The notes: a model not told the origin generated them from the letters alone. DNA of 64,000 nt from IMGVR_UViG_3300007770_001284:1-64000; one strand, 5' to 3'; shown: positions 4,919 to 38,244, counted from the first letter of the stretch. Numbers and translations are program-made.

Positions 4919-5682
4919 GTCATTATTTAAAATACGCAAAGAATCGATTCTCCCAGAACGGTGAAGACGGTATCCTAGACCAGCTGTTCAAGGACTTGCA
5001 TATCGAGGCAGGTATCGTTGTTGAGTTCGGCGCCTGGGATGGTGTGTATCTTAGTAACACTTACCTGTTATGGAGGTACAAGGACTTCGACGCGGTACTG
5101 ATAGAAAGCGATCTGTGTAAAGCGACAGAACTAGTCTCCGTGACAAGAGGTTTCGATAACGTGGAGGCTGTATACGCTGCGGTGTCTCCTGTTAAAGACC
5201 ACAAGAATTCGCTCGACAATATGTTGGATCGTTCTGCCTTTGATGTTACGGAAGACTCGCTTGCGTTGGTCTCTAGTGATATCGACGGATCCGATTATGG
5301 CATATTCGAGTCTATGGAACGGCATCTTCCAAAAGTTGCTCTTATCGAGACATCCACCGGACCAGATCCACATTCTGGTAATTTGAGACAACTGACCGAT
5401 CTAGCGGAAGCAAAAGGATATACGCTAGTATGTCATACTGGTAATGCGGTCTACGTAAGGAACGATCTTATGCATCATCTAGACCATATAGACTTCGTAT
5501 ACGAAGATATGTGTTGTACTGAAGACGATGTAACTGCGCTACAAAATATCGGCTCTGAGGGTAAGAGTCGAATACCCACAATATACCGTCCTACCCGTGC
5601 GACGACGACTACGTACTTGAATTCTGTTACTAAAGAGATAGCGGCATGCAAGGCCCTCTCTGAGTCGGTGACAGGTGGCTAA
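4915..5682 (+). CDS. FkbM-like SAM-dependent methyltransferase
   Basis: SQNGEDGIL, VVEFGAWDG..LSNT, DIDGSDY, LVCHTGNAVY. Confidence 0.75.
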   Translation: MSHYLKYAKNRFSQNGEDGILDQLFKDLHIEAGIVVEFGAWDGVYLSNTYLLWRYKDFDAVLIESDLCKATELVSVTRGFDNVEAVYAAVSPVKDHKNSLDNMLDRSAFDVTEDSLALVSSDIDGSDYGIFESMERHLPKVALIETSTGPDPHSGNLRQLTDLAEAKGYTLVCHTGNAVYVRNDLMHHLDHIDFVYEDMCCTEDDVTALQNIGSEGKSRIPTIYRPTRATTTTYLNSVTKEIAACKALSESVTGG

Positions 5683-5797
5683 ACGACCATATGTCTTGGG
5701 TCGACAGGGGTAGTTTTTGCACTAGTGCCCTCGGTCGCTCTCCACGTGGAGTATAAAAAAAAGGGAGAATTGAAATCTCTCCTTAGCCCCCGTACGG

Positions 5798-5972
5798 GTG
5801 AGACATTTTTTTGTCTCACTTTTGTATCACATTCTGTAACATTTTTATGTATCATTTGTTACGGTGTTACATTTTTTTGTAACACTATTCCGTAACATTT
5901 ATGTCTCACTTCGGTGGATCTCTCACGCTCAACTCCTCTCAAGTATATTATTGTAACATTACACGTCTCACT
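5798..5972. repeat. iterated TGWNWCA/GTAACA motifs and GTGAGACA-T6-TGTCTCAC inverted repeat in a non-coding region
   Basis: GTAACA at 5836, 5879, 5892, 5953; TGTTAC at 5857, 5865; GTATCA at 5824, 5849; GTCTCACT at 5813, 5903, 5965. Confidence 0.85.
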
Positions 5973-6054
5973 GTTCACGACTGTTTTCCACGAGAGCGTA
6001 CGCTGAGTCTACCCGGCGCGGGGGCGGAAGTGAAAAAAAAGTTTTAACATTATC

Positions 6055-6083
6055 ATGAACAACATCGGCTAACCTCTTATTAT
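6055..6083 (+). promoter_or_regulatory. sigma70-type promoter for 6139..6363
   Basis: ATGAAC-N17-TATTAT; followed by a 5' hairpin GTTGGGGA/TCCTCAAC. Confidence 0.55.
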
Positions 6084-6138
6084 TGGACCACGTTGGGGAT
6101 GGCTCCTCAACATTAACCATGAAGGATGGAAAAAATAA

Positions 6139-6363
6139 ATGCCGTATAGCAAGAATCAGTCCACCAAGCGCTTTAGTTTTGGTATCACACGTAACTCCAC
6201 CAGCAAGAAGGCTGGCGCGAATGTCGTAACAATCGCAACCAACGCGGACGACAGTATGTACTACTCGACCCCCACCACGCAGCTCTCAATGACTGTCAAG
6301 GAAGCCCGAGTACTTCAGAGTTTCCTCAACGAGACTCTCGAGAGTGATATCAGCGTAGGGTAA
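6139..6363 (+). CDS. 74-aa monocistronic hypothetical protein
   Basis: ORF between its own promoter and a strong terminator. Confidence 0.8.
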   Translation: MPYSKNQSTKRFSFGITRNSTSKKAGANVVTIATNADDSMYYSTPTTQLSMTVKEARVLQSFLNETLESDISVG

Positions 6364-6382
6364 TTTTTTACCGACGTGATTT

Positions 6383-6413
6383 AAAGCCGGGGATTTTTCC
6401 CCGGCTTTTTTTT
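6383..6413 (+). terminator. Rho-independent terminator
   Basis: AAAGCCGGGGA-TTTT-TCCCCGGCTTT followed by a T run. Confidence 0.9.
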
Positions 6414-6440
6414 GAACAAAAGGCCGAGCGCTCTTACTAT
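6412..6440 (+). promoter_or_regulatory. sigma70-type promoter for candidate ncRNA
   Basis: TTGAAC-N17-TACTAT; predicted +1 at G6447 coincides with the start of the closing stem. Confidence 0.65.
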
Positions 6441-6446
6441 TGAATT

Positions 6447-6660
6447 GGATCAGGGAGAGGTAAGAAGATGCCGTAGAAACTCGGGGAATGTGGAAGCGGA
6501 AAAAGTCAGCGCGTTGGGGGGACGCAAGGGTGATGTCATCGCCGTGTTTGGGAATGGTGGAACGTCGGCGAAAGCGGTGACGCAAACGAACCGTCAGACC
6601 GCAACATCGCCCGGGTGGTCGGGTCCGAGTTCCGACCACCCACTCCCCCTTCCCTGGTCC
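6447..6660 (+). ncRNA. candidate novel structured ncRNA (~214 nt)
   Basis: closing stem 6447-6456/6651-6660; stems 6528-36/6604-12, 6539-44/6566-71, 6574-78/6598-6602, 6613-22/6632-41. Confidence 0.65.
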
Positions 6661-6691
6661 GATTTACGGAGGAAAATATTTTGCACAGCGC

Positions 6692-6720
6692 GTGCAAAAC
6701 TAGTGGTAATGTGGTACAAT
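6692..6720 (+). promoter_or_regulatory. conserved early promoter, copy 1
   Basis: GTGCAA-N17-TACAAT with extended -10 TG; same motif at 8606, 10068, 13323. Confidence 0.85.
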
Positions 6721-6765
6721 ATAATTGAATGGAGGGATTGGTTCCCCCACTAACTTAGGAAGTAT

Positions 6766-7581
6766 ATGAGACTCCGTGACTACAAAGCCCTCCTCGTATC
6801 AGACCGCAAAGCGGCGATGCTATTCGATCTAACTGAGCGCCACCCACGCGGACCAGAAGCTAAGCTCCGCGCACGTGACTACGAGCCACACGAGGGTTAT
6901 TACAATAACGTCGGTGCTGTGCTGGTGCTGAAAGAGTCTTCAATCCCGGCGACAGCTGAAGGATCACCCGCTACCGGGGGATGGGACCCTCGCGAGATTT
7001 ACGAAATCGAATCCGGCGAGTGGGAGCTTAAGCGACTCCTCGAGCGTATCGAAGTACCTGAGGATGTCGGTCGTGGGTCAACTTGGGGAGTCCAAGATGG
7101 CAATCGGAAGCTGTTCCCCGGGGGAGGATCGGCACTGACTCGTAGGTCCCGCCGCGCTAGCGGACGTATCTACCAAGCGAAGCGGTGGGTCAAGGAAAAT
7201 ATCAAGACTGCTATCTACAGCGTCTCCCTCGGCTACGGCACTGAGGTCCACGTCCACGGTGACAGTGACGAACAAGCGTTCATGCAGTACGAAATGTTCC
7301 TCAAGGGTGGAGTGGCCGGAATCCCGGACGCTCGTAAAGGGTACGACAATCAAGCTCGCTACGTTAAGCCGGCCGATAGTCCGACCGCGCTGATGACTCT
7401 CAACTCGAAGTTCGTCAATGACATGGACAGTCAGGTTGCTGCTAGCCTGGCTAACATTGAAAAGCTGAAGAAGGAAGTGGAAGCGATGAAGGCCGCTAGG
7501 GAGTTGGTGTACAGCTACTCGGTCAACATGGCAGCTACCTACGGTATCGATGATGATGAAGATGACGAGGCGGCAGCATAA
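6766..7581 (+). CDS. hypothetical early protein with C-terminal coiled coil and acidic tail
   Basis: 271-aa ORF with SD AGGAAG; first gene after the promoter at 6692. Confidence 0.85.
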   Translation: MRLRDYKALLVSDRKAAMLFDLTERHPRGPEAKLRARDYEPHEGYYNNVGAVLVLKESSIPATAEGSPATGGWDPREIYEIESGEWELKRLLERIEVPEDVGRGSTWGVQDGNRKLFPGGGSALTRRSRRASGRIYQAKRWVKENIKTAIYSVSLGYGTEVHVHGDSDEQAFMQYEMFLKGGVAGIPDARKGYDNQARYVKPADSPTALMTLNSKFVNDMDSQVAASLANIEKLKKEVEAMKAARELVYSYSVNMAATYGIDDDEDDEAAA

Positions 7582-7844
7582 TGGAAGAAGAACGTACACT
7601 CGGTCCACCTCAGATCCACGTCGGACTGTTCGCTCAAGCACATGAATTCGTGGATGAGTTGTGCGCCGGTATTGTCTATGGCGCGGCAGTCCAAGAGCTG
7701 GCCACACAGCAAGTCAGGATAACCACTGCGCTGGCTGAGACGAAATCTTTGGACGATCCAGGCGTGCAAGAATTGGCGGAGATTGACATGGAGATGGAAT
7801 TGAAGTGGCAACTTGCGTCTGAATTGTTTGGTATCGAGGCTTAA
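7581..7844 (+). CDS. hypothetical protein
   Basis: 87 aa; TAATG-coupled to the upstream gene. Confidence 0.75.
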   Translation: MEEERTLGPPQIHVGLFAQAHEFVDELCAGIVYGAAVQELATQQVRITTALAETKSLDDPGVQELAEIDMEMELKWQLASELFGIEA

Positions 7845-7882
7845 CTAACACCATATTTAATAAGGAATGGAGGTAATGTCGA

Positions 7883-8170
7883 ATGGCAGATAATCTCGCA
7901 GTCTTTCACACTCTCTCGAAAACGTTGGATAATACTGAACTACGTGCAGCAATCAATATTCTGATTCGTGAGCGTAAATCCCGTGATGAGAGAAAGTCCA
8001 ATGATAATAGGTACTTGCTTAAGGTCGGTGACCGCGTTGAGTGGAACGGTCGAGCTGGGAATGCTACCGGTACTGTAACGAAGGTCAAGCGTAAGAAGGC
8101 TCTCGTCACGGAAGATATAATGAAGAGTCGGTGGGATATCCCGCTTAGCATGCTTACAAAGGTTTCATAG
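7883..8170 (+). CDS. hypothetical protein with C-terminal SH3/KOW-like domain
   Basis: LKVGDRVEW...GTVTKVKRKKALV...WDIPLSML; SD GGAGG. Confidence 0.8.
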   Translation: MADNLAVFHTLSKTLDNTELRAAINILIRERKSRDERKSNDNRYLLKVGDRVEWNGRAGNATGTVTKVKRKKALVTEDIMKSRWDIPLSMLTKVS

Positions 8171-8178
8171 GAGTCATC

Positions 8179-8352
8179 ATGGTTTGGACAGTCATATACA
8201 GCGAGGCGACCGTCAGCTATTCGATCACAATCACGACATGTGGCAACGATTACAACGAAGCGTTGCTAGAAGCAGAACGCCGCAAGCCACTTCACAGTAG
8301 TGTCTTCGCCATCCTAAAGGGAAGTCACACAGATACAGTCCGGTTCTACTAA
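8179..8352 (+). CDS. 57-aa hypothetical protein
   Basis: SD AGGAG; MVWTVIYSEATVSY...; below the track length cutoff. Confidence 0.65.
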   Translation: MVWTVIYSEATVSYSITITTCGNDYNEALLEAERRKPLHSSVFAILKGSHTDTVRFY

Positions 8353-8362
8353 GGAGGATACC

Positions 8363-8578
8363 GTGTCAGTAGCAGCAGAGAAGACTAGTCAAGAAAGTAG
8401 ATCGTATAGGAATTACGATTACATCAGCACGTCGTATTGCGACATGTGCAGGGTTCGAACCAGTGTCGTCAACATCGTGGCAACTGGTAGGAAAGTATGT
8501 GGCCGCTGCGATGAGGAACACTATCTCATCGTCGGTGAGCTGGAGAAGAACAGGTGGATGAGGACGGGGAGGCGGTGA
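8363..8578 (+). CDS. small zinc-ribbon protein
   Basis: CDMC...CGRC; SD AAGGAGG; GTG start. Confidence 0.7.
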   Translation: MSVAAEKTSQESRSYRNYDYISTSYCDMCRVRTSVVNIVATGRKVCGRCDEEHYLIVGELEKNRWMRTGRR

Positions 8579-8605
8579 AATAAAGTGAATTTTATTTGCA
8601 GCTTC

Positions 8606-8634
8606 GTGCAATTCTTCCCATAATATGGTACAAT
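8606..8634 (+). promoter_or_regulatory. conserved early promoter, copy 2
   Basis: GTGCAA-N17-TACAAT, then ATAAATGAAGG. Confidence 0.85.
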
Positions 8635-8700
8635 ATAAATGAAGGTGGGGAAAGGAAGAGGTCCTTCTCCCCCCAAATAGTCACCCACTAAGGACAAATC

Positions 8701-9789
8701 ATGGACGTCAAAACTCTCAAAACATGTATCGCAGCCCTTCCACCCAATATCGCTGCGCTAATGCGCGGTCCCACCGGTGTCGGTAAGTCACACGTAGCCA
8801 AGGATGTCGCAGATGTCCTCGGGCTCCCATTCCTCGATGTCCGCGGAAGCACCATGGACGAGGCTAAGGTCGGCGGAATCCCGGATTTCGAGACCTCAAA
8901 GGAACGTGGGGTGTCCACCTTCTGTCCTCCCTCTTGGTTCAAGCGCGCTTGCGATGAGCCAGTTCTCCTGATGCTCGATGAGCTCAACCGCTCGATGCCG
9001 CAGGTACAGCAGGCCTTCTTTCAGATTGTCCTGGACCGAGAGCTCGGTAACGACGCTGACGGTGTACCTCTGAGGCTCCACCCCGGAACGCGTATCATCG
9101 CGGCAGTTAACTGCGGTAACGAATACGATGTCAACGACATGGATCCCGCCCTCTTGCGGCGCTTCTGGGTCTGTGACCTCGAGCCTACCGTAGCCGACTG
9201 GATTGAGTGGGCAACCGAAGCCGGTCTCGATAAGGTCCTGGTGGAGTTCATCCAGCAGAACCCCGAGCACTGGAGAGTCGACCCCGCCGATGTGGAATCT
9301 GGAACGGTCGTTCCTACTCCCGCCTCCTGGCACCGTCTCAGCGACACTCTGGTCTCGGCCGGATTGGAGCCTGCAAAGATGGCTGGATTCGAGGTTAGCT
9401 CGACTACCTACCCTCTGACCATGGGCTTCGTAGGTACGGAAGCTGCGATCTCCTTCGTTGACTTCCTCAAGAACTACGAACGTAACATTACCGCAGAGGA
9501 TGTCCTGGCCGGTAAGGTCACGGCAGAAGATGTCAAGGAGCTCCCCGCTTCTCAGAAGACTGCCCTCATCGACAAGATCAGCACTCACGCTGCTGAGAAC
9601 AAGTGGAAGAAGGCAGAGGTCAAGAGGATCGCGGCGTTCGCAACCGAACTCGGTGGTGAGTTCCTGATTGCAACCTTCACGGCAGTGCAGAGAGCCAACA
9701 ACATGGCGAACCTGCTCCCCCTCAACAAGTTGATTGGAATGGAAGTAGTCTCCCTGGTCAACGATGCACGGGCAGTGTCGAAGGACTAA
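8701..9789 (+). CDS. MoxR-like / AAA_5 family AAA+ ATPase
   Basis: Walker A GPTGVGKS, Walker B LMLDELNR, sensor IAAVN, MDPALLRRF. Confidence 0.9.
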   Translation: MDVKTLKTCIAALPPNIAALMRGPTGVGKSHVAKDVADVLGLPFLDVRGSTMDEAKVGGIPDFETSKERGVSTFCPPSWFKRACDEPVLLMLDELNRSMPQVQQAFFQIVLDRELGNDADGVPLRLHPGTRIIAAVNCGNEYDVNDMDPALLRRFWVCDLEPTVADWIEWATEAGLDKVLVEFIQQNPEHWRVDPADVESGTVVPTPASWHRLSDTLVSAGLEPAKMAGFEVSSTTYPLTMGFVGTEAAISFVDFLKNYERNITAEDVLAGKVTAEDVKELPASQKTALIDKISTHAAENKWKKAEVKRIAAFATELGGEFLIATFTAVQRANNMANLLPLNKLIGMEVVSLVNDARAVSKD

Positions 9790-9806
9790 AGGGGAATGAC
9801 GTCCCC

Positions 9807-9844
9807 GGTGTCGGGGGGTGGGTGACCCCCCGGCGCCATCTTTT
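9807..9844 (+). terminator. GC-rich hairpin terminator
   Basis: GGTGTCGGGGGG/CCCCCCGGCGCC 12-bp stem followed by ATCTTTT. Confidence 0.65.
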
Positions 9845-9860
9845 ATCACCCAGGAAAGAT

Positions 9861-10055
9861 ATGACGAATCAACCCACAGATACTGAAGTCATACAAGCTG
9901 TCCAACGATGGCTTATAGAAGCACGAGACTTCAGGAATGATGGGTATGTCCAGCACGGGTATAAAGAGAAATTGCTAGCGGTGCATGCCACCACAACAGC
10001 AGCTCTACAAACGCTGGGATTGATCACTAATATTTCCTCAGAAAAGAGTAATTAA
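9861..10055 (+). CDS. hypothetical protein
   Basis: ATG at 9861 with AGGAAAG SD; trimmed from track ORF 9822. Confidence 0.7.
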   Translation: MTNQPTDTEVIQAVQRWLIEARDFRNDGYVQHGYKEKLLAVHATTTAALQTLGLITNISSEKSN

Positions 10056-10067
10056 ATCTAACACTTC

Positions 10068-10096
10068 GTGCAATTGTGCTCAACATGTGGTACAAT
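10068..10096 (+). promoter_or_regulatory. conserved early promoter, copy 3
   Basis: GTGCAA-N17-TACAAT, then ATAATTGAAGG. Confidence 0.85.
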
Positions 10097-10118
10097 ATAA
10101 TTGAAGGTAGGAATGGAT

Positions 10119-11537
10119 ATGGCCGCTAAATCAAATACCCCAGAAGCTGGACGCGACATCGGCACGGTAACCCACGCTGATAAGGCAACTGCCGCCGCAT
10201 TCACTCTTAAGCCACACATCGTAGCGATGATGCTCGAAGAGCCCTTCTACGGAAAGGTCCTTCGGAAGGTCTCGAAGATTCGCACCGAGCAGGTCTCAAC
10301 CGCCGGTGTTCTCTGCCAAGATGGTGATCTTAAGCTCTGGTGGAACCCACGGTTCATGGCTGGTCTCCGGGCCAAGCACGTACGTGGAGTCATGAAGCAC
10401 GAAATGCTCCACCTGGTCTTCGAGCACACCACAACTCGTAAGTTCACTCCTCACATCATCTGGAACTACGCTACCGACCTGGCTATCAACAGCCACCTGG
10501 CCGATGAGCTCCCCGAGTTCTGTCTCCTCCCAGGTCGCGGGTTCAAGGCCCTCACCGCGGAAGATAAGGAAAAAATGGGAGAGGAAGCCGTCCGTCGGTA
10601 TGAACTGGTCTCCGCTAAGATCGAATCCTTCCCGCTGCACATGGCAGGGGAATGGTACTTCGCACGGTTGATGGAAGACAAGGACGTCGCTGACTCCATC
10701 CAGGATCCTAACCCCGATAAGAACGATTGTGAAGGTGATGGTGGCGGCGAAGGTCAGCCTGGAGAGGGTCAGCCCGGTCAGGGTGGTGGTCCCGGAAACG
10801 GAACTCCTCAGATGCCCGGTACTCTCGATGACCACGGTGGGTGGGGAGAGATGACGGACGAAGAGCGTGAGTTCGTGAAGGCCAAGATCAAGCAGGCCGC
10901 CGGCGATGCTGCTCGGGAGTGTGATGCTAAGGGTGGCTGGGGTAACGTCCCCGCGGAACTTCGGAAGAAGATTCGGGAAGCCCTCATCAGTGAACTTCCC
11001 TGGCAGAAGGTGCTGGATCGGTTCCTCGGCTACAGCCGTCGGGCCAACCGGTCTACCAGCTGGTCGACCATCCACTCCGCTTACGGTCCCATCACTCCTG
11101 GCGCGAAGCGAGGGTACACTTCTTCGGTAGCCACCTACATCGATCAGAGTGGGTCGGTTGGAGATGAGGAGCTTACGCTGCTCTTCGGTGAGTTGTCCGG
11201 TCTGGCTAAGAAGACTGAGTTCACTTGCTTCCACTTTGACACTGAGATTGATGAGGCCTCCAAGACAGTCTGGAAGAAGGGTCGGACACAGCCGCCGCAC
11301 CGGACTCGGGGTGGAGGTACTTGCTTCATCGCTCCTTCCAAGCACGCAAACGATCGGCGGAAGGAGTTCGACGGTTACGTCATCCTGACGGATGGTTACG
11401 CTAGCGACCCCGGTCCCAGCAAGTTGCCCCGGGCATGGATCATCACCCCTGACGGTGCAGTCCAAGACTGGATGAACAAGTACAAGAAGGACACCATCAT
11501 CCACATGAAGTGGCCGGCCAGCAGGGTCGCCGCTTAA
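10119..11537 (+). CDS. DUF2201-type protein: metallopeptidase-like N-domain, Gly-rich linker, vWA-like C-domain
   Basis: KHEMLHLVFEH (HExxH), WNYATDLAIN, DDHGGW, IDQSGSV (MIDAS), GGGTCF, ILTDGY. Confidence 0.88.
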   Translation: MAAKSNTPEAGRDIGTVTHADKATAAAFTLKPHIVAMMLEEPFYGKVLRKVSKIRTEQVSTAGVLCQDGDLKLWWNPRFMAGLRAKHVRGVMKHEMLHLVFEHTTTRKFTPHIIWNYATDLAINSHLADELPEFCLLPGRGFKALTAEDKEKMGEEAVRRYELVSAKIESFPLHMAGEWYFARLMEDKDVADSIQDPNPDKNDCEGDGGGEGQPGEGQPGQGGGPGNGTPQMPGTLDDHGGWGEMTDEEREFVKAKIKQAAGDAARECDAKGGWGNVPAELRKKIREALISELPWQKVLDRFLGYSRRANRSTSWSTIHSAYGPITPGAKRGYTSSVATYIDQSGSVGDEELTLLFGELSGLAKKTEFTCFHFDTEIDEASKTVWKKGRTQPPHRTRGGGTCFIAPSKHANDRRKEFDGYVILTDGYASDPGPSKLPRAWIITPDGAVQDWMNKYKKDTIIHMKWPASRVAA

Positions 11538-11551
11538 AATCAGGAGACTAC

Positions 11552-11728
11552 ATGTCTACCACGGAAGTCGAGTTCATTATGCTACAGCTGGCGGCTTTTA
11601 GCTTCGTCTGCTTTTCAATCGCCTTTGGAATCATTGGTGTGATGCTCAAGCGTAAGGCCAATGGAGAGATCCGGCCGCGGGTCAAGCGTCATCCTAACGG
11701 TCGTGTCATTCGAAACGCACGCGGCTAA
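11552..11728 (+). CDS. small membrane protein
   Basis: SD AGGAG; one hydrophobic segment followed by a basic tail. Confidence 0.7.
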   Translation: MSTTEVEFIMLQLAAFSFVCFSIAFGIIGVMLKRKANGEIRPRVKRHPNGRVIRNARG

Positions 11729-11773
11729 AAACAAAAACATCTAAAGAGCTAATAACTCCAATAGGAGAAGTGA

Positions 11774-12067
11774 ATGCAACATCGTAAGAAGGTAGAGTGT
11801 GCAGACGGATTCACGGTCTCGGTACAGGGTCACGAGGGTGCGTACTGTTCTCCCAGGAACGATGTCGGTCCCTACGAGTCTGTCGAGTGCGGGTTCCCAA
11901 GTCACTACGATATCCACCTGCAACCCTACGCCGAGGACCCGAGCCGACCGACCGAGACGGTCTACGGTTGGGTCCCGGCCGTCGTGGTCCAGCTCTGTAT
12001 CGACTCCCACGGCGGCATGGTCGCCGGGGAGTTGCCACCCTTTGTCCAGGGATACAAATCCGTGTAA
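11774..12067 (+). CDS. conserved phage hypothetical protein
   Basis: CADGFTVSVQ...YCSPR...VECGFPS...VYGWVP pattern; SD AGGAG. Confidence 0.8.
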   Translation: MQHRKKVECADGFTVSVQGHEGAYCSPRNDVGPYESVECGFPSHYDIHLQPYAEDPSRPTETVYGWVPAVVVQLCIDSHGGMVAGELPPFVQGYKSV

Positions 12068-12345
12068 CAAATAACAGATACATGTAACACCGTAACATTT
12101 ATGTTACACATGGGGTGAACCAAGGGGCCGTAACATTAATGTTTCACCCCCCATACGAGGCCCCTATTTCAAGGCCCATAGGGGCCTACCTCAAGGGCCC
12201 CAAAATTGGCCCCATCTGAGCCCCAAATTTAGGCCCCTCTGTACTCACCCAGAGGCCACTGGTAGGGGTTGCCTTAGGCGAGGGAAATTTTTTTTTCGAG
12301 CTAATTTGAAAACCAAAAGCTAATTTCACACAAAAAATTCTCGAA
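12063..12345. repeat. second GTAACA iteron cluster, followed by phased GGCCCC repeats and A/T tracts
   Basis: TGTAACA at 12063, 12083; CCGTAACATTTATGT at 12090; CCGTAACATTAATGT at 12128; GGCC(CC) at 12126, 12159, 12173, 12183, 12196, 12208, 12232, 12254; GCTAATTT twice. Confidence 0.85.
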
Positions 12346-12561
12346 GCAAATTCTAAAACAGCACCGGTATCATGAAACATCAACTACACCCAAGAGAAAT
12401 AAAAGCTCGCACTCTCATGATATTGATCTCCATAGGGCTAGCACTCATCGTGCATTACTTCGCCAATGAGGCGCATGATATCCCACCACAGTCAGATTGT
12501 GAGTGTATGTGCCCAGACCACCGTGAACACGACACCACCGACCGTTAAAATAAGGAATACC

Positions 12562-12996
12562 ATGAGCAAGTACAACATCCGCATCAAGCCAAGAGATCTC
12601 GCCATAGTGAAAGAGCACATCAAGGATGGGCGTAAGATCGCAGCCATCAAGCACGCGAGGTCGACCGGGAAGCAATACCCTCCCCGCGAGAGCTCCATGC
12701 CCGGGGAAGAGAACAAGCTGGATTACTCCCCTGCCTTGAAATGCGCGAAAGACGCCGTTGAGGTATTGATGGGATCGTGCCAACGACAAGCCGCCCATGC
12801 TCTGTTCACCCCTATGTTCAAGATCCTCAGCTTCAAAGTAGAGACCGAAGATGGTACAGTAGAGGTCGATGTCGACGAATTGCGCATAAGACTCCTGGAT
12901 GGCATGAGCGAAATGAGCCTGTCTGAGATGTCCCACATGACTGACCTCGCAGTATACGTTGCCAAGTGGCAAGGTGATGATGTCGATAATAGTTAA
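12562..12996 (+). CDS. protein with ribosomal bL12 C-terminal-like motif
   Basis: KIAAIKHAR...LKCAKDAVE resembles KI.AIK.VR...LKEAK..VE; SD TAAGGA. Confidence 0.6.
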   Translation: MSKYNIRIKPRDLAIVKEHIKDGRKIAAIKHARSTGKQYPPRESSMPGEENKLDYSPALKCAKDAVEVLMGSCQRQAAHALFTPMFKILSFKVETEDGTVEVDVDELRIRLLDGMSEMSLSEMSHMTDLAVYVAKWQGDDVDNS

Positions 12997-13124
12997 ACGC
13001 CGGAAGGTGTATCATTTCGAAGCGCGAAGATCCTATCCCGATCAATCACTTAGCTGGGCCGATACACCTAAGCGGCGATATCATCTATTTTTATCCTAAC
13101 AGTGATTGGGAAACTACTGGTGTC

Positions 13125-13307
13125 GTGTGTCATGATAGCGATGGAGCTGCTTACGATCAATCGGGTACTGCCTTATACACAGGTATCGTCGTGAGTAACG
13201 TCTACGTGTATACTGCTGACTGTCTGTATTTCTACGACGTGTTATGTGGTGATGGCAGGATCCGGCGCTTGAAATCTACGGAGATCTACGGTATCTCAAA
13301 GGGATAA
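13125..13307 (+). CDS. possible small SH3-like protein (start uncertain)
   Basis: frame open from 12993; GIVV...YDVLCGDGRIRRL; no clear ATG or SD. Confidence 0.4.
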   Translation: MCHDSDGAAYDQSGTALYTGIVVSNVYVYTADCLYFYDVLCGDGRIRRLKSTEIYGISKG

Positions 13308-13322
13308 CTTTTGTTTTTCTTC

Positions 13323-13351
13323 GTGCAAACTGAGCCCACGTGTGGTATAAT
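13323..13351 (+). promoter_or_regulatory. conserved early promoter, copy 4
   Basis: GTGCAA-N17-TATAAT, then ATAAATGAAGG. Confidence 0.85.
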
Positions 13352-13357
13352 ATAAAT

Positions 13358-13740
13358 GAAGGTCGGGGTAGATAGTCCTCTTCCCTCTGTTCTTTGAATC
13401 TCGTAAAGGAAGTAGCAAATGGCTTGGCTCCACGTGTCCGGCTCAATATTGAGCGGCAAAGCTTAGGATGACGATGGTATAAGACCCATCGAGCAAGTAG
13501 AGAGCGTCTGACCCGCAAGGGATGTCCGGTTCTCGATCACGCACCTGTGCCAATCACGTGGCCTTTACGCAATATTATGAGGAGCTGTTGGGGATACCCA
13601 GCAGAGTCGATGGGAGTCGGCAGTCGTCGTTGAAGTCGAAGCTCGCGAGCCAGTTAACTAATGTATCGCGTCTCTCTGAGGGCTGGTGAACAGTTAAATA
13701 ACCAATACCCGCATCGTACGGACGGGCTCCCATCTCTCCT
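13358..13740 (+). ncRNA. candidate structured ncRNA or long structured leader (two modules)
   Basis: stems 13426-36/13555-63, 13441-54, 13472-77/13486-91, CCC-GCAA-GGG 13512-21, 13580-84/13736-40, 13585-92/13597-604, 13609-16/13727-34, 13650-55/13681-86; no credible ORF. Confidence 0.55.
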
Positions 13741-13782
13741 CTACCCTTTTACCCATTACACTCTACCCTTTTACCCATTACA
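13739..13782 (+). repeat. perfect 2 x 22-bp tandem duplication (CTCTACCCTTTTACCCATTACA)
   Basis: copies 13739-13760 and 13761-13782 are identical. Confidence 0.95.
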
Positions 13783-13786
13783 CATC

Positions 13787-14344
13787 ATGTCGAATTACGA
13801 TCCCACTGTACCAATGCTCCGTCAACTGCTGGCTCTCTCTATCCTTGGGAGGCTAGAGGAGGCCGGCTTTGAATTGGAGCCACCGAAGCGTAAGCTCGTC
13901 AAACCCGAGCGAGCGGAGAAGATCTTCTCACGAGTGGTCGGTGACCCGACGACCGGGCTCAAGGTGATGGTATACACGACTGTCATCGGGGATGGTGATA
14001 CAATGCCCTACGAGGTACGTCTCGCGGGGTCTGATGCTATCCGGGTGTCGGCGGTATATGTGACCAAGGACGGAGAGACGAGGGGCCTGACAAGCGATAA
14101 GAGGGTGAACCGTACGGGAGATATCGAGGACATTGTAGATCGCATGGTGACACGTATGCGTGACGCCTGGCGTAGCTGCAAGACGGGAGTTCGTTGTCAT
14201 AGCTGCAATGCTCCTAAGTTCGTTACGAAGAATGGGAAGCAAGTCTGCGCTGAAATCTGCTGGAAGACCGATGAAGAAAAGGATCGGGACTCTGTGGCTT
14301 GGAACTATAGAAAACGTCGCCGGCGCTGGGGTGTCCGGTACTAA
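13787..14344 (+). CDS. hypothetical protein with C-terminal zinc ribbon
   Basis: CHSC...CAEIC; start trimmed to ATG 13787 because the upstream part overlaps the structured RNA and the tandem repeat. Confidence 0.75.
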   Translation: MSNYDPTVPMLRQLLALSILGRLEEAGFELEPPKRKLVKPERAEKIFSRVVGDPTTGLKVMVYTTVIGDGDTMPYEVRLAGSDAIRVSAVYVTKDGETRGLTSDKRVNRTGDIEDIVDRMVTRMRDAWRSCKTGVRCHSCNAPKFVTKNGKQVCAEICWKTDEEKDRDSVAWNYRKRRRRWGVRY

Positions 14345-14356
14345 TGAGGAGAGAAT

Positions 14357-14608
14357 ATGTCTGATGGAAATATTGTTTATCTAGATCGCGACCAATGTAT
14401 CGACTTTGGAGTCGAGTACTTTGGCGCGGGGTCGCTATGCGTCCCGGCTGATAGGCTGCTACGCTCAAAGGATTACGATCGTGTGCACCGAGATCTGCTC
14501 GAACCGCTGGGCCAGAATCTCGTGCACCTCGAGCGGCGTAGCCGCGATGCACCCGGGTGGTTCAATCTTTTCGAAACTCCAAGTCGCTCTCCCGCCCAAG
14601 GCGGGTAA
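14357..14608 (+). CDS. hypothetical protein
   Basis: SD GAGGAG; 83 aa. Confidence 0.75.
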   Translation: MSDGNIVYLDRDQCIDFGVEYFGAGSLCVPADRLLRSKDYDRVHRDLLEPLGQNLVHLERRSRDAPGWFNLFETPSRSPAQGG

Positions 14609-14619
14609 GAGAAGAATTA

Positions 14620-14829
14620 ATGAAGAAGATCTTCGGTTGGTTTGGTTGGCTCTTTTGCGAATTCGCATTTCGCTTGTGGGATATATCGACTGACCATGCA
14701 TGGGAAACCCACTGGATCGCCACGGGGGAGGAGCTTCCTCGCCCCATCCGTCAGCGCCTCGGCGACTTCGTCGCTCGTATCTTTTACGCTATCGGACGCA
14801 AGTTCTATTATTTGGAAGACAGATCATGA
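14620..14829 (+). CDS. hypothetical protein
   Basis: ATG 14620; coupled (ATGA) to the next gene. Confidence 0.65.
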   Translation: MKKIFGWFGWLFCEFAFRLWDISTDHAWETHWIATGEELPRPIRQRLGDFVARIFYAIGRKFYYLEDRS

Positions 14830-15227
14830 GTGCACATAAGCTGTATCCTGTCAGGGATGAAGACATCCCTCGATACATCAACCCACATGACTCCATGGTA
14901 AAATTCGCGGAGCGTGAGCGGTGGAAGATCATGCTGACGGGGAAGAAGATCGTTCCGTGGAAGACCGACATGATCGGTGCACTAGTCAGATACCTCCCAA
15001 CATTTCAGCACGACATCCGTAGAAATGAAGAGAGTCGACCCCTGCTCGGTGCTATGGGTACTGTCATCTCCGGTGAGTGGGTCAGTAACGCTTCTGTCGG
15101 TACTGATTTCTGTTTTTACAATATTCTCTGGCACGGAGTTGGATGTAGCGAAGACATGTCAGCTCGAGCAGATTTTCTCACCAAGACCGTACGTGTCGTT
15201 GACTTGGTGAGCAAGGAAGATAAGTGA
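14826..15227 (+). CDS. hypothetical protein
   Basis: ATG 14826 overlapping the upstream stop. Confidence 0.7.
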   Translation: MSAHKLYPVRDEDIPRYINPHDSMVKFAERERWKIMLTGKKIVPWKTDMIGALVRYLPTFQHDIRRNEESRPLLGAMGTVISGEWVSNASVGTDFCFYNILWHGVGCSEDMSARADFLTKTVRVVDLVSKEDK

Positions 15228-35756: not shown

Positions 35757-36923
35757 ATGTCAATTTTTCAAAGACACAAGACAATCGCTGATCGATCTGC
35801 TGGAGATCGATCCCGACATCGCAAAAAAATTGAGCGCGCTATTAAAGAGGGTATCTATAATATCGTTGCAGAAGAATCCATAATAGGAAAAGAGGGAAAG
35901 AAGAAATTTCGGATTCCTGTCCGCGGTATTAAGGAGTATCGTTTTGTCTATGGTGACAACGGATCAAAAAGAGTGGGCTCTGCGCAGGGTAAAGATGTCA
36001 AGCGTGGACAAGTGATCGGTAAAAAAGAGCAAGCAGAAGCTCCCGGAGAAGGCGAGGCTGGAAACCAGAAAGGAGAAGAGTATTACGAAGTAGAGCTTAC
36101 GCTAGACCAATTATCAGAATATCTTTTCAAAGATTTAGAGCTTCCAAACTTTGAAAAAAAGAAAAACATGAATGTGATATCGAAAAAGATCAAACGTCAT
36201 GGCTACAGAAGCAAAGGTATCCGACCACGATTAGACAAAAAAAAGACTGTAGTTGAAAAACTTAAGCGAAAAAATAAAAGCAAATTTATTTCAAGTGCAG
36301 AAAAGCAAGAAGAAGAAAGTTTCCCGTTCCACGATAATGACCTAAAGTATAGACACTACAAGGTTCACGAGAAAAAAAGCTCTAATGCAGTCATATTCTT
36401 CTTAATGGATATTTCAGGATCGATGTCAAAGCCAAAAAAATATCTAGCGCGAAGCTTCTTTTTTCTGTTATATCATTTTATTAGAGCGAGATATGATACA
36501 GTTGATTTAGTTTTTGTGGCTCATGATGTAGAGGCCTACGAAGTGACAGAAGAACAATTTTTTGGACGAGGATCTTCAGGGGGAACACTGGTATCCAGCG
36601 CGCTGAGCATGACAGATAACGTTATATCATCTAGATATCACCCTAATAGTTGGAATGTATATATTTTTCAGTGCTCTGATGGTGATAACTGGCCTACTGA
36701 TAACCAGAAGACGACTGAGCTAGCAAATCGGTTGCTTGAAAAAGTTCAATTTTTTGGATATTGTCAAATAGAGCCGAACGCAGAAAGAGCCGCTCACCCC
36801 AACCATGGCAGCTTACAAGAAGTGTATCAGCCTCTTATAGGACAAAAGTTTAAAACTGCTGAGGTCAGCTCAAAAGAGCATATCTGGCCAGCATTTAGAA
36901 CGTTTTTTGGAAATGATTTATGA
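35757..36923 (+). CDS. yeaH: YeaH/YhbH (DUF444) family protein
   Basis: DRSRHRKKI, FLMDISGSM, GGT.VSSAL, WNVYIFQCSDGDNW. Confidence 0.9.
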   Translation: MSIFQRHKTIADRSAGDRSRHRKKIERAIKEGIYNIVAEESIIGKEGKKKFRIPVRGIKEYRFVYGDNGSKRVGSAQGKDVKRGQVIGKKEQAEAPGEGEAGNQKGEEYYEVELTLDQLSEYLFKDLELPNFEKKKNMNVISKKIKRHGYRSKGIRPRLDKKKTVVEKLKRKNKSKFISSAEKQEEESFPFHDNDLKYRHYKVHEKKSSNAVIFFLMDISGSMSKPKKYLARSFFFLLYHFIRARYDTVDLVFVAHDVEAYEVTEEQFFGRGSSGGTLVSSALSMTDNVISSRYHPNSWNVYIFQCSDGDNWPTDNQKTTELANRLLEKVQFFGYCQIEPNAERAAHPNHGSLQEVYQPLIGQKFKTAEVSSKEHIWPAFRTFFGNDL

Positions 36924-38230
36924 GCGCTAATTTCTTAAAATCTCTTGAAGCGTGGGATGAAAAGATAGTCAAGCTAGCTAGCGAATACGGGTTAGATTGG
37001 TTTCCTATCATTTATGAAACCTGTGACTATTATGAGATGATTGGTAACATGGCATATCACGGCATGCCCACGCATTATAGGCATTGGAGCTTCGGGAAAT
37101 CATTCGAGCGTACCCATGCAATGTATGATGCTGGACTAGAGGGTCTTCCATACGAACTAATAATAAACAGCGATCCTTCGTTAGCCTACTTGATGGAAGA
37201 AAACCCATTGTACTTACAAGTTTTGATTATGTGCCACTGCGTTGGTCACTCAGATTTTTTTAAGAACAATATTACTTTTGCAAATACAGGGCCAGACCAT
37301 ATTCTATTACGCATGCGCAATGCAAAGAGATTTGTCGACGGTCTAATAGAAGATCCTTCAATCGGTGTACAAAGGGTAGAAGAAATTCTAGATGCTGCTC
37401 ATGCCCTTTCTCTTCAAGTGCCAAGACGTTATAAAAAATATGTGACGCAGAAAGAACAAAAAATGCACTTAATTCATGATATCAAAAACGGTAAATATGA
37501 GAATGCTGACATAACACCCAGCCCTAAAGCAATACCGGTTAGTCCAGAGCAAAATATTTTGGCATTCCTCGCCGAGTGCAGTCCTCATCTCGAAGACTGG
37601 GAGCGGGAGCTATTACACTTCGCGCGCGAGGATGCTGAATATTTCATGCCACAAATTAGGACAAAGATCATGAATGAAGGGTGGGCGTCATTTTGGCATT
37701 ACAGATTGATGCACGACCTTCAGCTCCCAACCTCGATGCATATTCCTTTTCTCAAAATGCACAATGAAGTTACAAAACCTCACCTGGGGAGCATTAACCC
37801 TTACCATTTGGGATTTTATCTTTTTAGAAAAATAGAAGAGCGCCACGGGCTAAAAGAATGTTTCATCGCAAGAGAAGCATTAAATGATGAATCGTTTATA
37901 AGACAATATTTAACAGAGGAAGATTGTGTTAATTTAAACTTGTTTACGTTTGGACTGGACAAAAAAAGCTATGTAATAGAGGATGTATCGGATGAACCTG
38001 GATGGAAATCAGTGAAAGAAAACCTAATCAAACAGGTTTCTGCGAATAATATTCCTTCAATTATAGTTGACAGAGTGGACAGCGCAAACATACTGTGCTT
38101 GAAACACGATCATGACGGCCGCGATTTGGAGCTAGAGTATGCAGAATCAGTTATTGAACACATCACAACGTTATGGGGGGATGTAGTTAAACTTGATACG
38201 TTCATTGAAGATGAGCCATTTGAGATTTAA
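36920..38230 (+). CDS. spoVR: SpoVR/YcgB family protein
   Basis: GMPTHYRHWSFGK, YELIINSDP, HCVGHSDFFKNN, TKIMNEGWASFWH, NPYHLG. Confidence 0.93.
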   Translation: MSANFLKSLEAWDEKIVKLASEYGLDWFPIIYETCDYYEMIGNMAYHGMPTHYRHWSFGKSFERTHAMYDAGLEGLPYELIINSDPSLAYLMEENPLYLQVLIMCHCVGHSDFFKNNITFANTGPDHILLRMRNAKRFVDGLIEDPSIGVQRVEEILDAAHALSLQVPRRYKKYVTQKEQKMHLIHDIKNGKYENADITPSPKAIPVSPEQNILAFLAECSPHLEDWERELLHFAREDAEYFMPQIRTKIMNEGWASFWHYRLMHDLQLPTSMHIPFLKMHNEVTKPHLGSINPYHLGFYLFRKIEERHGLKECFIAREALNDESFIRQYLTEEDCVNLNLFTFGLDKKSYVIEDVSDEPGWKSVKENLIKQVSANNIPSIIVDRVDSANILCLKHDHDGRDLELEYAESVIEHITTLWGDVVKLDTFIEDEPFEI

Positions 38231-38244
38231 TACGGAGCAAAAAT

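What the first reader, a model, noticed from the sequence alone, without database searches (positions are those of the whole stretch)
13352..13786. Second long non-coding, heavily base-paired region behind a strong early promoter
Seen: about 430 nt without a credible ORF in an otherwise gene-dense genome. Module 1 (13426-13563) is closed by GGC..CACGTG/CACGTGGCC and contains hairpins 13441-54, 13472-91 and a CCC-GCAA-GGG GNRA loop. Module 2 (13580-13740) has AGGAG/CTCCT and GATGGGAG/CTCCCATC closing stems, an 8-bp hairpin at 13585-604, and a distal stem 13650-55/13681-86 separated by an A/U-rich asymmetric bubble. Inference: one or two ncRNAs. The stem-bubble-stem shape of module 2 is loosely 6S-RNA-like (an RNA polymerase decoy), though shorter than typical.
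Basis: partly seen in the sequence, partly recalled or inferred. Interest (0 to 1): 0.7.

Follow-up and report, generated by a model that had tools for sequence, protein, structure and literature searches.

The report
Two conserved phage RNA genes
The 430-base gap holds two separate, evolutionarily conserved folded RNA genes of a marine jumbo phage, transcribed from a strong early promoter through a ribosomal-RNA-style anti-termination signal; in related phages they sit among tRNA genes, they match no described RNA family, and they are not 6S RNA.

Summary
As one piece it folds no better than shuffles (z -0.24), but conservation settles the question.

- **Module 1 (M1, 13404-13567).** It is about 94% identical across 11 distinct sequences from marine phage contigs. 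11 of 35 base pairs carry compensatory changes, against 2.6 in shuffles (0 of 500 reach it).
- **Module 2 (M2, 13579-13741).** Seven homologues each fold into the same three helices, built from different sequences (MFE z -2.3 to -3.2).
- **Independence.** Relatives have the orders M1-M2, M2-M1, M1-X-M2 and M1 alone. In three loci the modules lie inside or immediately upstream of tRNA genes, and in three a CCA-adding-type nucleotidyltransferase gene follows the array.
- **New signal.** Every operon leader that drives these modules carries a boxA element (consensus GYTCTTTAANA) 33-79 nt after the -10 box. No neighbouring protein-gene leader has one.
- **Expression.** In four marine metatranscriptomes, contigs cover M1 and the next module but not the flanking ORFs.

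No Rfam family matches, 6S included. The M1 model found nothing in 153 bacterial genomes.

**Verdict:** two new stable RNA genes in a Nus/boxA-antiterminated RNA operon. Their effector function is unknown, and the 6S reading is not supported.

The parts
13320..13351 (+). Early promoter: TTCGTGCAA (-35 region), 15-nt spacer, extended -10 TGTGGTATAAT. The transcription start is inferred at about 13358.
   Evidence: Sequence. Near-identical promoters have their -10 ends at 6720, 8634, 10096 and 13351; the loose pattern occurs 11 times against 1.25 in shuffles. The same promoter precedes M1 in relatives. An RNA-seq contig of a relative begins about 10 nt after the predicted start.
13358..13403 (+). 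Untranslated leader: a G-rich/C-rich 5' stem-loop region, then a boxA-like element GTTCTTTGAAT at 13389-13399, then a short A/U-rich spacer.
   Evidence: The published gammaproteobacterial consensus is GYTCTTTAANA (PMC5725501), and E. coli rrnH reads TGCTCTTTAACAA in L155. Five relatives match the consensus perfectly, five have one mismatch and the window has two. The element lies 33-40 nt after the -10 box (+79 in L140; L142 read by eye). No boxA lies in the leader of any of the 15 other promoters in the same loci; one such motif sits at +101, inside an ORF.
13404..13567 (+). M1, a structured RNA gene of about 164 nt. P1 pairs 13405-13409 with 13562-13566. An invariant 20-nt 5' bulge, AAG-N-AGCAAAUGGCUUGGCU, occupies 13410-13429. 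P2 pairs 13430-13436 with 13555-13561. Inside lie hairpin Ha (13438-13456), hairpin Hb (13472-13491, 8-nt loop with invariant UANGA) and a long hairpin Hc (13500-13533) capped by GCAA. A possible closing helix pairs GGG/AGG near 13465-13467 with CCC/CCU near 13544-13546.
   Evidence: Alignment A2 of 11 distinct sequences, 94% mean identity; alifold; pair counts with controls. The window-specific G>A at column 63 together with C>U at column 148 suggests the extra helix, from one event only. Strain variants at 13501, 13504 and 13505 keep Hc paired.
13568..13578 (+). A/U-rich single-stranded linker between M1 and M2. It is a candidate endonuclease (RNase E-type) processing site; this is inferred.
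   Evidence: In all relatives the modules are separated by short A/U- or U-rich linkers.
13579..13741 (+). M2, a structured RNA gene of about 163 nt. The outer stem pairs GAGGAG 13579-13584 with CUCCUC 13736-13741. Hairpin P2 occupies 13585-13604. After the linker AGUC, the long stem P3 pairs 13609-13618 with 13725-13734 and encloses a branched interior.
   Evidence: Alignment A3; alifold finds 11 of 28 pairs with compensatory change. MFE z is -2.3 to -3.2 in six homologues. The same three helices appear in seven independent folds, with five P2 and five P3 sequence variants.
13739..13782 (+). Exact 22-nt tandem duplication (CTCTACCCTTTTACCCATTACA, two copies) between M2 and the start codon. 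It is a strain polymorphism and not part of the conserved RNAs.
   Evidence: Sequence. Contigs of closely related strains in runs X14 and X7 lack one copy ('13739 left out 22').
13787..14344 (+). First protein gene downstream (185 aa): a Zn-ribbon protein with an Arg-rich C-terminal tail and unknown function. In this phage it has no promoter of its own, so it is probably read through from the RNA operon.
   Evidence: ORF. No Pfam or PHROG family. 51 marine homologue clusters. AF2 model pLDDT 88, with no solved fold match.

Best explanation
The gap is a small stable-RNA operon.

**Shown, or directly supported.** Host RNA polymerase starts at a strong early promoter (-10 box at 13346-13351). It transcribes a leader carrying a boxA element and then two independent structured RNA genes, M1 (about 164 nt) and M2 (about 163 nt). 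Both structures are maintained by selection, and the two modules are independent of each other.

**Inferred.**
- As in ribosomal RNA operons, boxA recruits NusB/NusE and the other Nus factors. The polymerase then resists Rho termination while it makes long untranslated, highly folded RNA.
- The modules are cut apart at their A/U-rich linkers, and by RNase P where a tRNA follows. They accumulate as discrete stable RNAs.
- In this phage the operon has no terminator after M2, so it also reads into the 185-aa gene.
- What the RNAs do is not established. The clues are their company in relatives (tRNAs, a tRNA/tmRNA-like module, a CCA-adding-type enzyme), the near-invariance of M1 including its unpaired stretches, and early high-level expression. 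My committed reading is that they act in trans as protein- or RNA-binding cofactors or decoys aimed at a conserved host component of the tRNA/translation machinery. That puts them in the same unexplained class as the T4 RNAC/RNAD and GOLLD/ROOL RNAs.
For: - **Conservation and covariation of M1:**
- **Conservation and covariation of M2:**
- **Independent modules, order variable:** M1-M2 in the window, L138, L146 and L132; M2-M1 in L140 and L142; M1-X-M2 in L005; M1 without M2 in L139, L144, L133, L129 and L131.
- **Placement among tRNA genes:** in L140 and L142 the modules lie between tRNA-Arg and tRNA-Lys/Leu. In L133, L140 and L142 M1 ends 10-12 nt before a tRNA.
- **Neighbouring enzyme:** a PolyA_pol-head (CCA-adding type) gene follows the arrays in L005, L139 and L144.
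- **boxA:** present in all 11 RNA-operon leaders examined (L142 and L131 by eye). It is absent from the leaders of the 15 other promoters in the same loci. In the own genome it is the only boxA-like site behind a promoter. Consensus from PMC5725501; E. coli rrnH boxA read.
- **RNA-level selection:** G-U and A-U exchanges in helices.
- **Expression:** 24 public runs, 18 of them RNA libraries from 11 studies, hold M1 words. In four RNA runs, contigs cover M1 plus the next module and nothing of the flanking ORFs, and one contig starts about 10 nt after the predicted start.
- **No conserved ORF:**
Against: - No host is known and no strand-specific read-level data were available. The RNA-run contigs are shallow (2-5x), so stable processed species and their exact ends are not shown.
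- The window's own boxA has two mismatches to the gammaproteobacterial consensus, and the host's own boxA is unknown.
- M1 folds no better than shuffled sequence (z about -0.2 to -0.6).
- M1 variation is small (94% identity), and most double changes come from two or three divergent sequences (window, L131, L140). They therefore represent few independent events.
- In the window genome the tRNAs, the tmRNA and the nucleotidyltransferase lie more than 200 kb away in the record. The translation link rests on relatives.
- No binding partner or target is identified. Ro60, RtcB and SmpB are absent from the 75%-complete record.
Confidence: 0.6

Rival explanations
1. M1 (and perhaps M2) acts in cis on the transcribing polymerase as a processive antiterminator RNA, like the put RNAs of phage HK022 or EAR. 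It would let the polymerase run through the many stem-plus-U-tract structures of the RNA/tRNA array. Its conservation would then reflect contacts with the conserved polymerase.
For: The modules always occupy the promoter-proximal position, directly after boxA. The arrays downstream are full of stable stems followed by U-rich tracts. Unpaired M1 nucleotides are extremely conserved.
Against: - boxA already supplies an antitermination signal.
- In L140 and L142, M2 precedes M1.
- M1 is 2-3 times larger and more branched than put.
- A/U-rich linkers and tRNA-array placement fit released stable RNAs.
- No Rfam antiterminator family matches.
Confidence: 0.15
2. M1 is a catalytic or self-assembling RNA. 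It would be either a new self-cleaving/processing ribozyme that helps liberate the neighbouring RNAs, or a small relative in kind of the tRNA-associated phage RNAs GOLLD/ROOL, which form multimeric RNA-only assemblies.
For: - About 94% identity over 164 nt, with many invariant unpaired nucleotides, while flanking leaders and the neighbouring protein (66% identical) diverge.
- Multi-junction fold with a GNRA loop and a loop carrying an invariant UANGA.
- Same genomic habit as GOLLD/ROOL, near tRNAs in phages (PMC5737381).
- A nearly invariant palindrome AAGCUU lies in a linker.
Against: - No match to GOLLD, ROOL or any ribozyme family.
- RNA-run contigs bridge the M1 3' boundary into the next module, so cleavage there is at least incomplete.
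- The palindrome is broken in L131.
- No biochemical data exist.
Confidence: 0.12
3. One reading: M2 is a short 6S-like RNA that mimics an open promoter and sequesters host sigma-70 RNA polymerase.
For: The size (about 165 nt) and early strong expression would suit a polymerase decoy. In the window's own fold there is a long closing stem with an A/U-rich interior.
Against: - No hit to the 6S model or any Rfam family at permissive thresholds, in the window and in six homologous loci.
- The conserved architecture is a three-helix junction with a branched interior.
- The interior 'bubble' is the least conserved part and differs between homologues.
Confidence: 0.04
4. The region is a cis-regulatory 5' UTR (riboswitch, thermometer or translational operator) of the 185-aa gene at 13787.
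For: In this phage no promoter or terminator separates M2 from the ATG, which lacks a Shine-Dalgarno sequence. The gene must therefore be expressed from this transcript.
Against: - The modules are uncoupled from the gene in relatives. In L005 two other genes and a promoter intervene. In L146 and L138 a new promoter follows M2. In L140 and L142 tRNAs follow.
- In L157 the homologue has its own promoter directly upstream, and none of L156-L158 has M1 or M2 within 8 kb.
- The segment next to the ATG is a polymorphic duplication.
Confidence: 0.05
5. The region encodes one or more small proteins.
For: ORFs of 25, 28 and 55 aa exist on the + strand.
Against: - The ORFs are not conserved in frame or position.
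- Indels of 1 nt occur in M1.
- Substitutions are pairwise compensatory, not codon-periodic.
- The 55-aa ORF spans a module junction that relatives lack.
Confidence: 0.02

Closest known systems
Phage T4 small stable RNAs RNAC and RNAD (species 1 and 2), encoded in the T4 tRNA cluster
   Same: They are phage-encoded, 119-139 nt, non-coding and transcribed with the tRNA genes. Their function is still unknown (PMC3014915; PMC9697503; annotation). In relatives, M1 and M2 sit in the same kind of place.
   Different: There is no sequence or structure homology: model R1 finds nothing in the T4 region. T4 RNAC ends in a tRNA-like T-arm, which M1 and M2 lack. The T4 RNAs are late, whereas these sit behind an early-type promoter with boxA.
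rRNA-operon / lambda nut antitermination signal (boxA bound by NusB-NusE, with NusA, NusG and SuhB)
   Same: A boxA matching GYTCTTTAANA lies in the promoter-proximal untranslated leader, after a stem-loop. That is the rrn order (boxB, then boxA), and it sits ahead of long structured untranslated RNA.
   Different: Here it heads a phage operon of small RNAs and tRNAs, not rRNA. No N-like protein or boxC was identified. Nus binding is inferred, not tested. The window copy deviates at two positions.
GOLLD and ROOL RNAs
   Same: They are structured RNAs of unknown function that are often near tRNA genes and in phages or prophages, possibly co-transcribed with tRNAs (PMC5737381).
   Different: They are 3-5 times larger and give no Rfam match here. 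They are found mainly in Firmicutes and rumen or lake data, not in marine jumbo phages.
6S RNA
   Same: Similar length, abundant, non-coding.
   Different: No covariance-model match. M2 is a junction fold, not a rod with a central bubble.
tmRNA / tRNA-like RNAs of huge phages
   Same: Huge phages carry tRNAs, tmRNAs and CCA-adding enzymes (PMC7162821). This genome has a canonical tmRNA. The first ~20 nt of M2 closely resemble the start of a tRNA/tmRNA-like module (Y) in relatives.
   Different: M1 and M2 have no T-arm, no CCA end conserved in the window, and no tag reading frame. ARAGORN and Rfam do not call them.

Membership tests
6S RNA (Rfam RF00013 and relatives) | Match to the family covariance model | tested here: not met
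   cmscan of 13250-13850 at E <= 10 gives no match to any family. Six homologous loci at E <= 5 give none on M1 or M2.
6S RNA (Rfam RF00013 and relatives) | One extended, mostly double-stranded rod with a large conserved central bubble | tested here: not met
   Seven homologues fold as outer stem plus hairpin plus long stem with a branched interior. The interior is poorly conserved.
6S RNA (Rfam RF00013 and relatives) | Binds sigma-70 holoenzyme and templates product RNA | not testable with these tools
   Needs biochemistry.
boxA (Nus-factor) antitermination leader | Sequence GYTCTTTAANA (gammaproteobacterial consensus, PMC5725501) | tested here: inconclusive
   Perfect in L005, L129, L138, L146/L132 and L131. 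One mismatch in L139/L133/L144, L140 and L142. The window reads GTTCTTTGAAT, with two mismatches at positions 8 and 11. The host's own boxA is unknown.
boxA (Nus-factor) antitermination leader | Located in the transcribed leader just downstream of the promoter, ahead of untranslated RNA | tested here: met
   It lies 33-40 nt after the -10 box (+79 in L140) in every RNA operon. It is absent from the leaders of the 15 other promoters in the same loci. It is the only promoter-linked site among 39 loose matches in the genome.
boxA (Nus-factor) antitermination leader | NusB/NusE binding and Rho resistance | not testable with these tools
   Needs reporter assays in nus mutants or binding assays.
Phage small stable RNAs of tRNA clusters (T4 RNAC/RNAD type) | Encoded within or next to a phage tRNA gene cluster | tested here: met
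   Met in relatives L140, L142 and L133. In the window genome itself the tRNAs lie at 244-254 kb of the record.
Phage small stable RNAs of tRNA clusters (T4 RNAC/RNAD type) | Homology to RNAC/RNAD | tested here: not met
   Model R1 finds nothing in L154, the T4 tRNA region.
Phage small stable RNAs of tRNA clusters (T4 RNAC/RNAD type) | Accumulates as a discrete processed RNA | tested here: inconclusive
   RNA-run contigs cover M1 and the next module but not the flanking ORFs. Depth is low, the data are contigs only, and no ends were mapped.
tRNA / tmRNA | Acceptor stem, T-arm with GTTCRAnYC loop, CCA-compatible 3' end | tested here: not met
   ARAGORN finds nothing in the window and Rfam gives no tRNA or tmRNA hit on M1 or M2. 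The CCA in the relatives' ...GGCCACU is part of helix P1, and it covaries to CCUUU in the window.
GOLLD / ROOL | Match to the family models | tested here: not met
Riboswitch / cis-regulatory leader | Constant association with one downstream gene family | tested here: not met
   Downstream partners differ between loci: another RNA module, a tRNA, a nucleotidyltransferase gene, unrelated ORFs or the 185-aa gene. Homologues of the gene occur without the RNAs.

The most novel reading that the evidence does not exclude
M1 is a previously undescribed class of highly conserved, complex-folded phage RNA with a biochemical role of its own. It could be a ribozyme, or a tight ligand or decoy for a universal host machine such as RNA polymerase, the ribosome or tRNA-processing enzymes. 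It is spread through cosmopolitan marine jumbo phages and visible in many ocean metatranscriptomes. Together with M2, X and Y it defines a phage 'stable-RNA operon' that borrows the host's rRNA antitermination system.
Probability: 0.25. Interest if true: 0.85.

Novelty: new variant of a known kind. Interest (0 to 1): 0.62.

Why it matters
Small stable RNAs next to phage tRNA genes (T4 RNAC/RNAD, GOLLD, ROOL) have stayed unexplained for decades. Here is a compact, very strongly conserved example with four useful properties:
- clear boundaries;
- a defined promoter;
- a testable transcription mechanism (boxA and Nus factors);
- traces in ocean metatranscriptomes.

If the boxA reading holds, a lytic jumbo phage uses the host's ribosomal-RNA antitermination machinery to mass-produce its own non-coding RNAs. 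M1, at about 94% identity with many invariant unpaired bases, is a good candidate for structure determination and partner fishing.

The work also corrects a tempting mis-annotation as 6S RNA.

Tried and rejected
- **Rfam:** the whole window at gathering thresholds, the region at E <= 10 and six homologous loci at E <= 5. Only tRNAs and one weak tmRNA hit on module Y were found.
- **DNA similarity to INPHARED phages:** none.
- **A 14-mer scan of viral contigs:** mostly chance hits.
- **Genome-contig scan with a 19-base pattern:** seven chance hits, no homologue.
- **Metagenome scan:** of its 19 loci, eight are chance matches. The M1 model R1 gives 45-87-nt partial hits on seven of them.
- **R1 searches:** nothing further in the own genome, in two bacterial genomes, in 151 sampled genomes of one bacterial phylum, in the T4 tRNA region, in the E. 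coli rrnH operon, or in three more distant phage loci.
- **M2 as a mimic of the 16S rRNA 3' end** (GGAUC..CACCUCCU and GUCGU..AACAA look alike by eye): profile and BLAST comparison with E. coli rrnH gave nothing above chance. Rejected.
- **M1 as a reduced or permuted RNase P RNA** (CR-I/CR-V-like strings): the order is wrong, the candidate P4 strand is used in the covarying helix P2, and there is no CM hit. Rejected.
- **Hammerhead-like core in M1 or M2:** key positions do not fit. Rejected.
- **Replication-origin primer RNA:** GC skew is positive throughout, with no switch near 13 kb, and the modules sit in tRNA arrays. Rejected.
- **Y-RNA/Ro or RtcB system and SmpB partner:** families absent from the record.
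- **The downstream 185-aa protein as a clue:** no Pfam or PHROG family. The AF2 model is confident but has no solved-structure match, only weak AFDB similarity to zinc-finger nucleic-acid-binding domains.
- **Literature:** full-text search for the invariant M1 string found no paper. The supplements of the IMG/VR structured-RNA survey are not held.

Full report
**Setting.** The window is the first 64 kb of a 254,743-bp IMG/VR virus record, estimated 75% complete. It is a marine jumbo phage with 44% G+C. Its nearest protein relatives in the INPHARED phage collection are only about 35% identical. Genes run almost entirely on the + strand, and GC skew is positive throughout.

**Checking the observation.**
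- The extended -10 TGGTATAAT lies at 13343-13351.
- M1 has the CCACGTG/CACGTGG closing helix, hairpins at 13441-54 and 13472-91, and the CCC-GCAA-GGG loop.
- M2 has the GAGGAG/CTCCTC and GATGGGAG/CTCCCATC stems and the 13585-13604 hairpin.

Only short ORFs occur on the + strand (25, 28 and 55 aa). None is kept in relatives.

The promoter belongs to a family with near-identical copies whose -10 boxes end at 6720, 8634, 10096 and 13351. All are followed by ...TGAAGGTNGGG.

Thermodynamics alone would have discarded the finding. The whole region folds no better than dinucleotide shuffles (z -0.24), and M1 alone gives z about -0.6. M2 is moderately stable (z -2.8).

**Related sequences.**
- The downstream protein led to four viral loci. 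In one lineage (L005 and others) the promoter plus M1 is 78% identical to the window but sits 1.5 kb away from the homologous gene.
- An invariant 19-mer of M1 retrieved 19 metagenome loci, of which 11 carry a true M1, one cut off at a contig end.
- Together this gives 11 distinct full-length M1 sequences, 94% identical on average. By contrast, the neighbouring protein is 66% identical between the two viral lineages, and the leaders and linkers are freely variable.

**M1 structure.** RNAalifold and a curated structure give these elements:
- an outer helix P1 (AGUGG/CCACU; AAAGG/CCUUU in the window);
- an invariant 20-nt bulge, AAG-N-AGCAAAUGGCUUGGCU;
- helix P2 (CCACACG/CGUGUGG; CCACGUG/CACGUGG in the window);
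- a hairpin Ha;
- a hairpin Hb with an 8-nt loop containing an invariant UANGA;
- a long hairpin Hc capped by a GNRA loop.

Of the cells, 96.6% are paired. Eleven of 35 pairs change on both sides, against 2.6 +/- 1.2 in column shuffles (0 of 500) and 0-2 when partners are slid by 1-3 columns. A window-specific G>A plus C>U pair hints at one more helix, closing the inner junction. Strain-level variants at 13501, 13504 and 13505 convert pairs to G-U or A-U and keep Hc intact.

The caveat is that variation is small. The double changes come mainly from the window, L131 and L140, so they represent few independent events.

**M2 structure.** Seven homologues each fold on their own into the same three helices:
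- a short outer stem, GAGG/CCUC (six pairs in the window);
- an adjacent 8-9-bp hairpin with five different sequences;
- after a 4-nt linker, a 10-bp stem (GGUGGGGAUC/GAUCCCCACC and variants) enclosing a branched, less conserved interior.

MFE z-scores are -2.3 to -3.2 in all six homologues tested.

**Two genes, not one.** The order of the modules changes between loci:

| Arrangement | Loci |
|---|---|
| M1-M2 | window, L138, L146, L132 |
| M2-M1 | L140, L142 |
| M1-X-M2 | L005 |
| M1 without M2 | L139, L144, L133, L129, L131 |

X and Y are two further structured modules that the window lacks. Y has a canonical T-arm and acceptor stem.

In L140 and L142 the modules lie between tRNA-Arg and tRNA-Lys/Leu inside tRNA arrays. 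In L133, L140 and L142, M1 ends 10-12 nt before a tRNA. In L005, L139 and L144 the array is followed by a PolyA_pol-head (CCA-adding type) nucleotidyltransferase gene. The window's genome has a homologue of that gene at 231.9 kb, beside a canonical tmRNA, with tRNAs at 244-254 kb.

Modules are separated by short A/U-rich linkers. Where M2 is the last module it is followed by a U-rich tract and then a new promoter. Where M1 follows it, the U-tract is weak or absent. In the window no promoter or terminator intervenes before the ATG at 13787, so that gene is probably expressed by read-through.

**A boxA leader.** In every operon the stretch between the promoter and the first module contains G(C/U)UCUUU(A)A.
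- Five relatives match the published gammaproteobacterial boxA consensus GYTCTTTAANA perfectly (PMC5725501).
- Five have one mismatch.
- The window has GTTCTTTGAAT at 13389-13399, with two mismatches.
- For comparison, the E. coli rrnH leader in L155 reads TGCTCTTTAACAA.

The element lies 33-40 nt after the -10 box (79 in L140). None of the 15 other promoters in the same loci, which drive ORFs, has one in its leader; the single such motif sits at +101, inside an ORF. Among 39 loose matches in the genome (21 expected), only the one at 13389 lies behind a promoter.

boxA is the NusB/NusE loading site of rRNA operons and lambda nut sites. Its presence ahead of long untranslated, structured RNA is what one expects if the transcript must escape Rho. 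This supports the non-coding RNA-operon reading, and it gives a mechanism that can be tested in E. coli.

**Expression.** M1 words occur in 24 public runs, 18 of them RNA libraries from 11 studies of marine, seawater and vent samples. In four RNA runs, short contigs cover M1 and run into the next module (M2 in one, Y in two). The flanking ORFs have zero coverage, and one contig starts about 10 nt downstream of the predicted start. Depth is low and only contigs were available, so this supports transcription without proving it, and it does not define the ends.

**Comparison with known families.**
- No Rfam 15 family matches. This covers 6S, tmRNA, RNase P, SRP, Y RNA, GOLLD, ROOL, phi29 pRNA, riboswitches and the known ribozymes.
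- The M1 model R1 finds only the M1 copy in the own genome.
- R1 finds nothing in T4's RNAC/RNAD region, the E. coli rrn operon or three more distant phage loci, or in 153 bacterial genomes.
- The 6S idea fails both the model test and the architecture test.
- The nearest analogues in kind are T4 RNAC/RNAD, whose function is still unknown, and GOLLD/ROOL, which lie near tRNAs in phages.
- Several resemblances seen by eye did not survive checking: 16S 3' end, RNase P CR-I/CR-V and hammerhead. They are listed under tried and rejected.

**Mechanism and confidence.**

*Shown:*
- two conserved, independently placed structured RNA modules;
- a conserved promoter;
- a conserved boxA-like leader;
- association with tRNA arrays in relatives;
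- presence in RNA libraries.

*Inferred:*
- Nus-dependent antitermination;
- endonucleolytic release of the modules;
- accumulation as stable RNAs;
- trans action on a conserved host component of the tRNA/translation apparatus.

The last step is the weakest. A cis-acting antiterminator role, or a catalytic or self-assembling role for M1, remains open.

**Downstream gene.** The 185-aa protein has 51 marine homologue clusters and a confident AF2 model (pLDDT 88). It has a zinc ribbon and an Arg-rich tail but no informative fold match. More distant homologues occur without M1 or M2 within 8 kb, and the L157 copy sits directly behind its own promoter. The RNAs are therefore not its dedicated regulator.

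Noticed in passing
window 13739-13782: An exact 22-nt tandem duplication (CTCTACCCTTTTACCCATTACA, two copies) lies just before the ATG at 13787, which has no Shine-Dalgarno sequence. Closely related strains in two public runs carry a single copy.
   Followed up: partly
window 6690-6730, 8600-8650, 10060-10110, 13320-13362; genome 225670-225710: A family of near-identical early promoters: TTCGTGCAA, 15 nt, TGTGGTAYAATATAAWTGAAGGT. Each is followed by a G-rich 5' stem-loop. Only the 13351 copy has a boxA and non-coding RNA behind it.
   Followed up: partly
L005:1543-1657; L139:~665-780; L129:~1733-1852: Module X is a third conserved structured RNA of about 115 nt, closed by GGUUUAG.../...CUAAACC. 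It lies between M1 and the next module in some relatives. It is absent from the window's genome and has no Rfam match.
   Followed up: no
L139:795-975; L144 (reverse strand, about 1660-1850 of the oriented locus); L131:1075-1240: Module Y is a tRNA/tmRNA-like RNA of about 180 nt. It has a canonical T-arm (GGAGGUUCGAAUCCUUCC) and a 7-bp acceptor stem, and the L131 copy ends CCACCA. ARAGORN misses it, and only L131 gives a weak Rfam tmRNA hit (E 0.018). Its first ~20 nt are nearly the same as the start of M2, which suggests common descent.
   Followed up: partly
L005:1845-1915; L129:1862-1935; L131:1245-1300: A conserved pseudoknot-like element, CACCAGGGARUGGCCCACCUUGGG ... GGGCC followed by U-rich sequence, lies immediately upstream of unrelated ORFs. 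It may be a terminator or a translational control element.
   Followed up: no
genome (outside window) 228165-228509 (- strand), 231860-232402, 244341-254720: A canonical tmRNA (tag ANNNNHFEYALAA), a PolyA_pol-head nucleotidyltransferase homologue and five tRNAs (Met, Lys, Asn, Arg, Leu) lie near the far end of the record. The same tRNA set recurs in the relatives' arrays. No SmpB was found in the record.
   Followed up: partly
window 13787-14344: The 185-aa protein has a CxxC...C...C zinc ribbon and an Arg-rich C-terminal tail. It belongs to a family of 51 clusters known only from marine metagenomes. The AF2 model is confident but has no solved-structure match.
   Followed up: yes
window 8701-11537 and 35757-40179: There is a MoxR-type AAA ATPase plus a DUF2201 metallopeptidase/VWA pair. 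Separately, a three-gene cluster ends in PrkA (PrkA Pfam domains; the first of its two upstream ORFs also weakly matches a PHROG sporulation-protein family). Both are unusual host-like modules for a phage.
   Followed up: no
window 5000-15000: This stretch has 51-53% G+C against a genome mean of 44%. It coincides with the cluster of early promoters.
   Followed up: no
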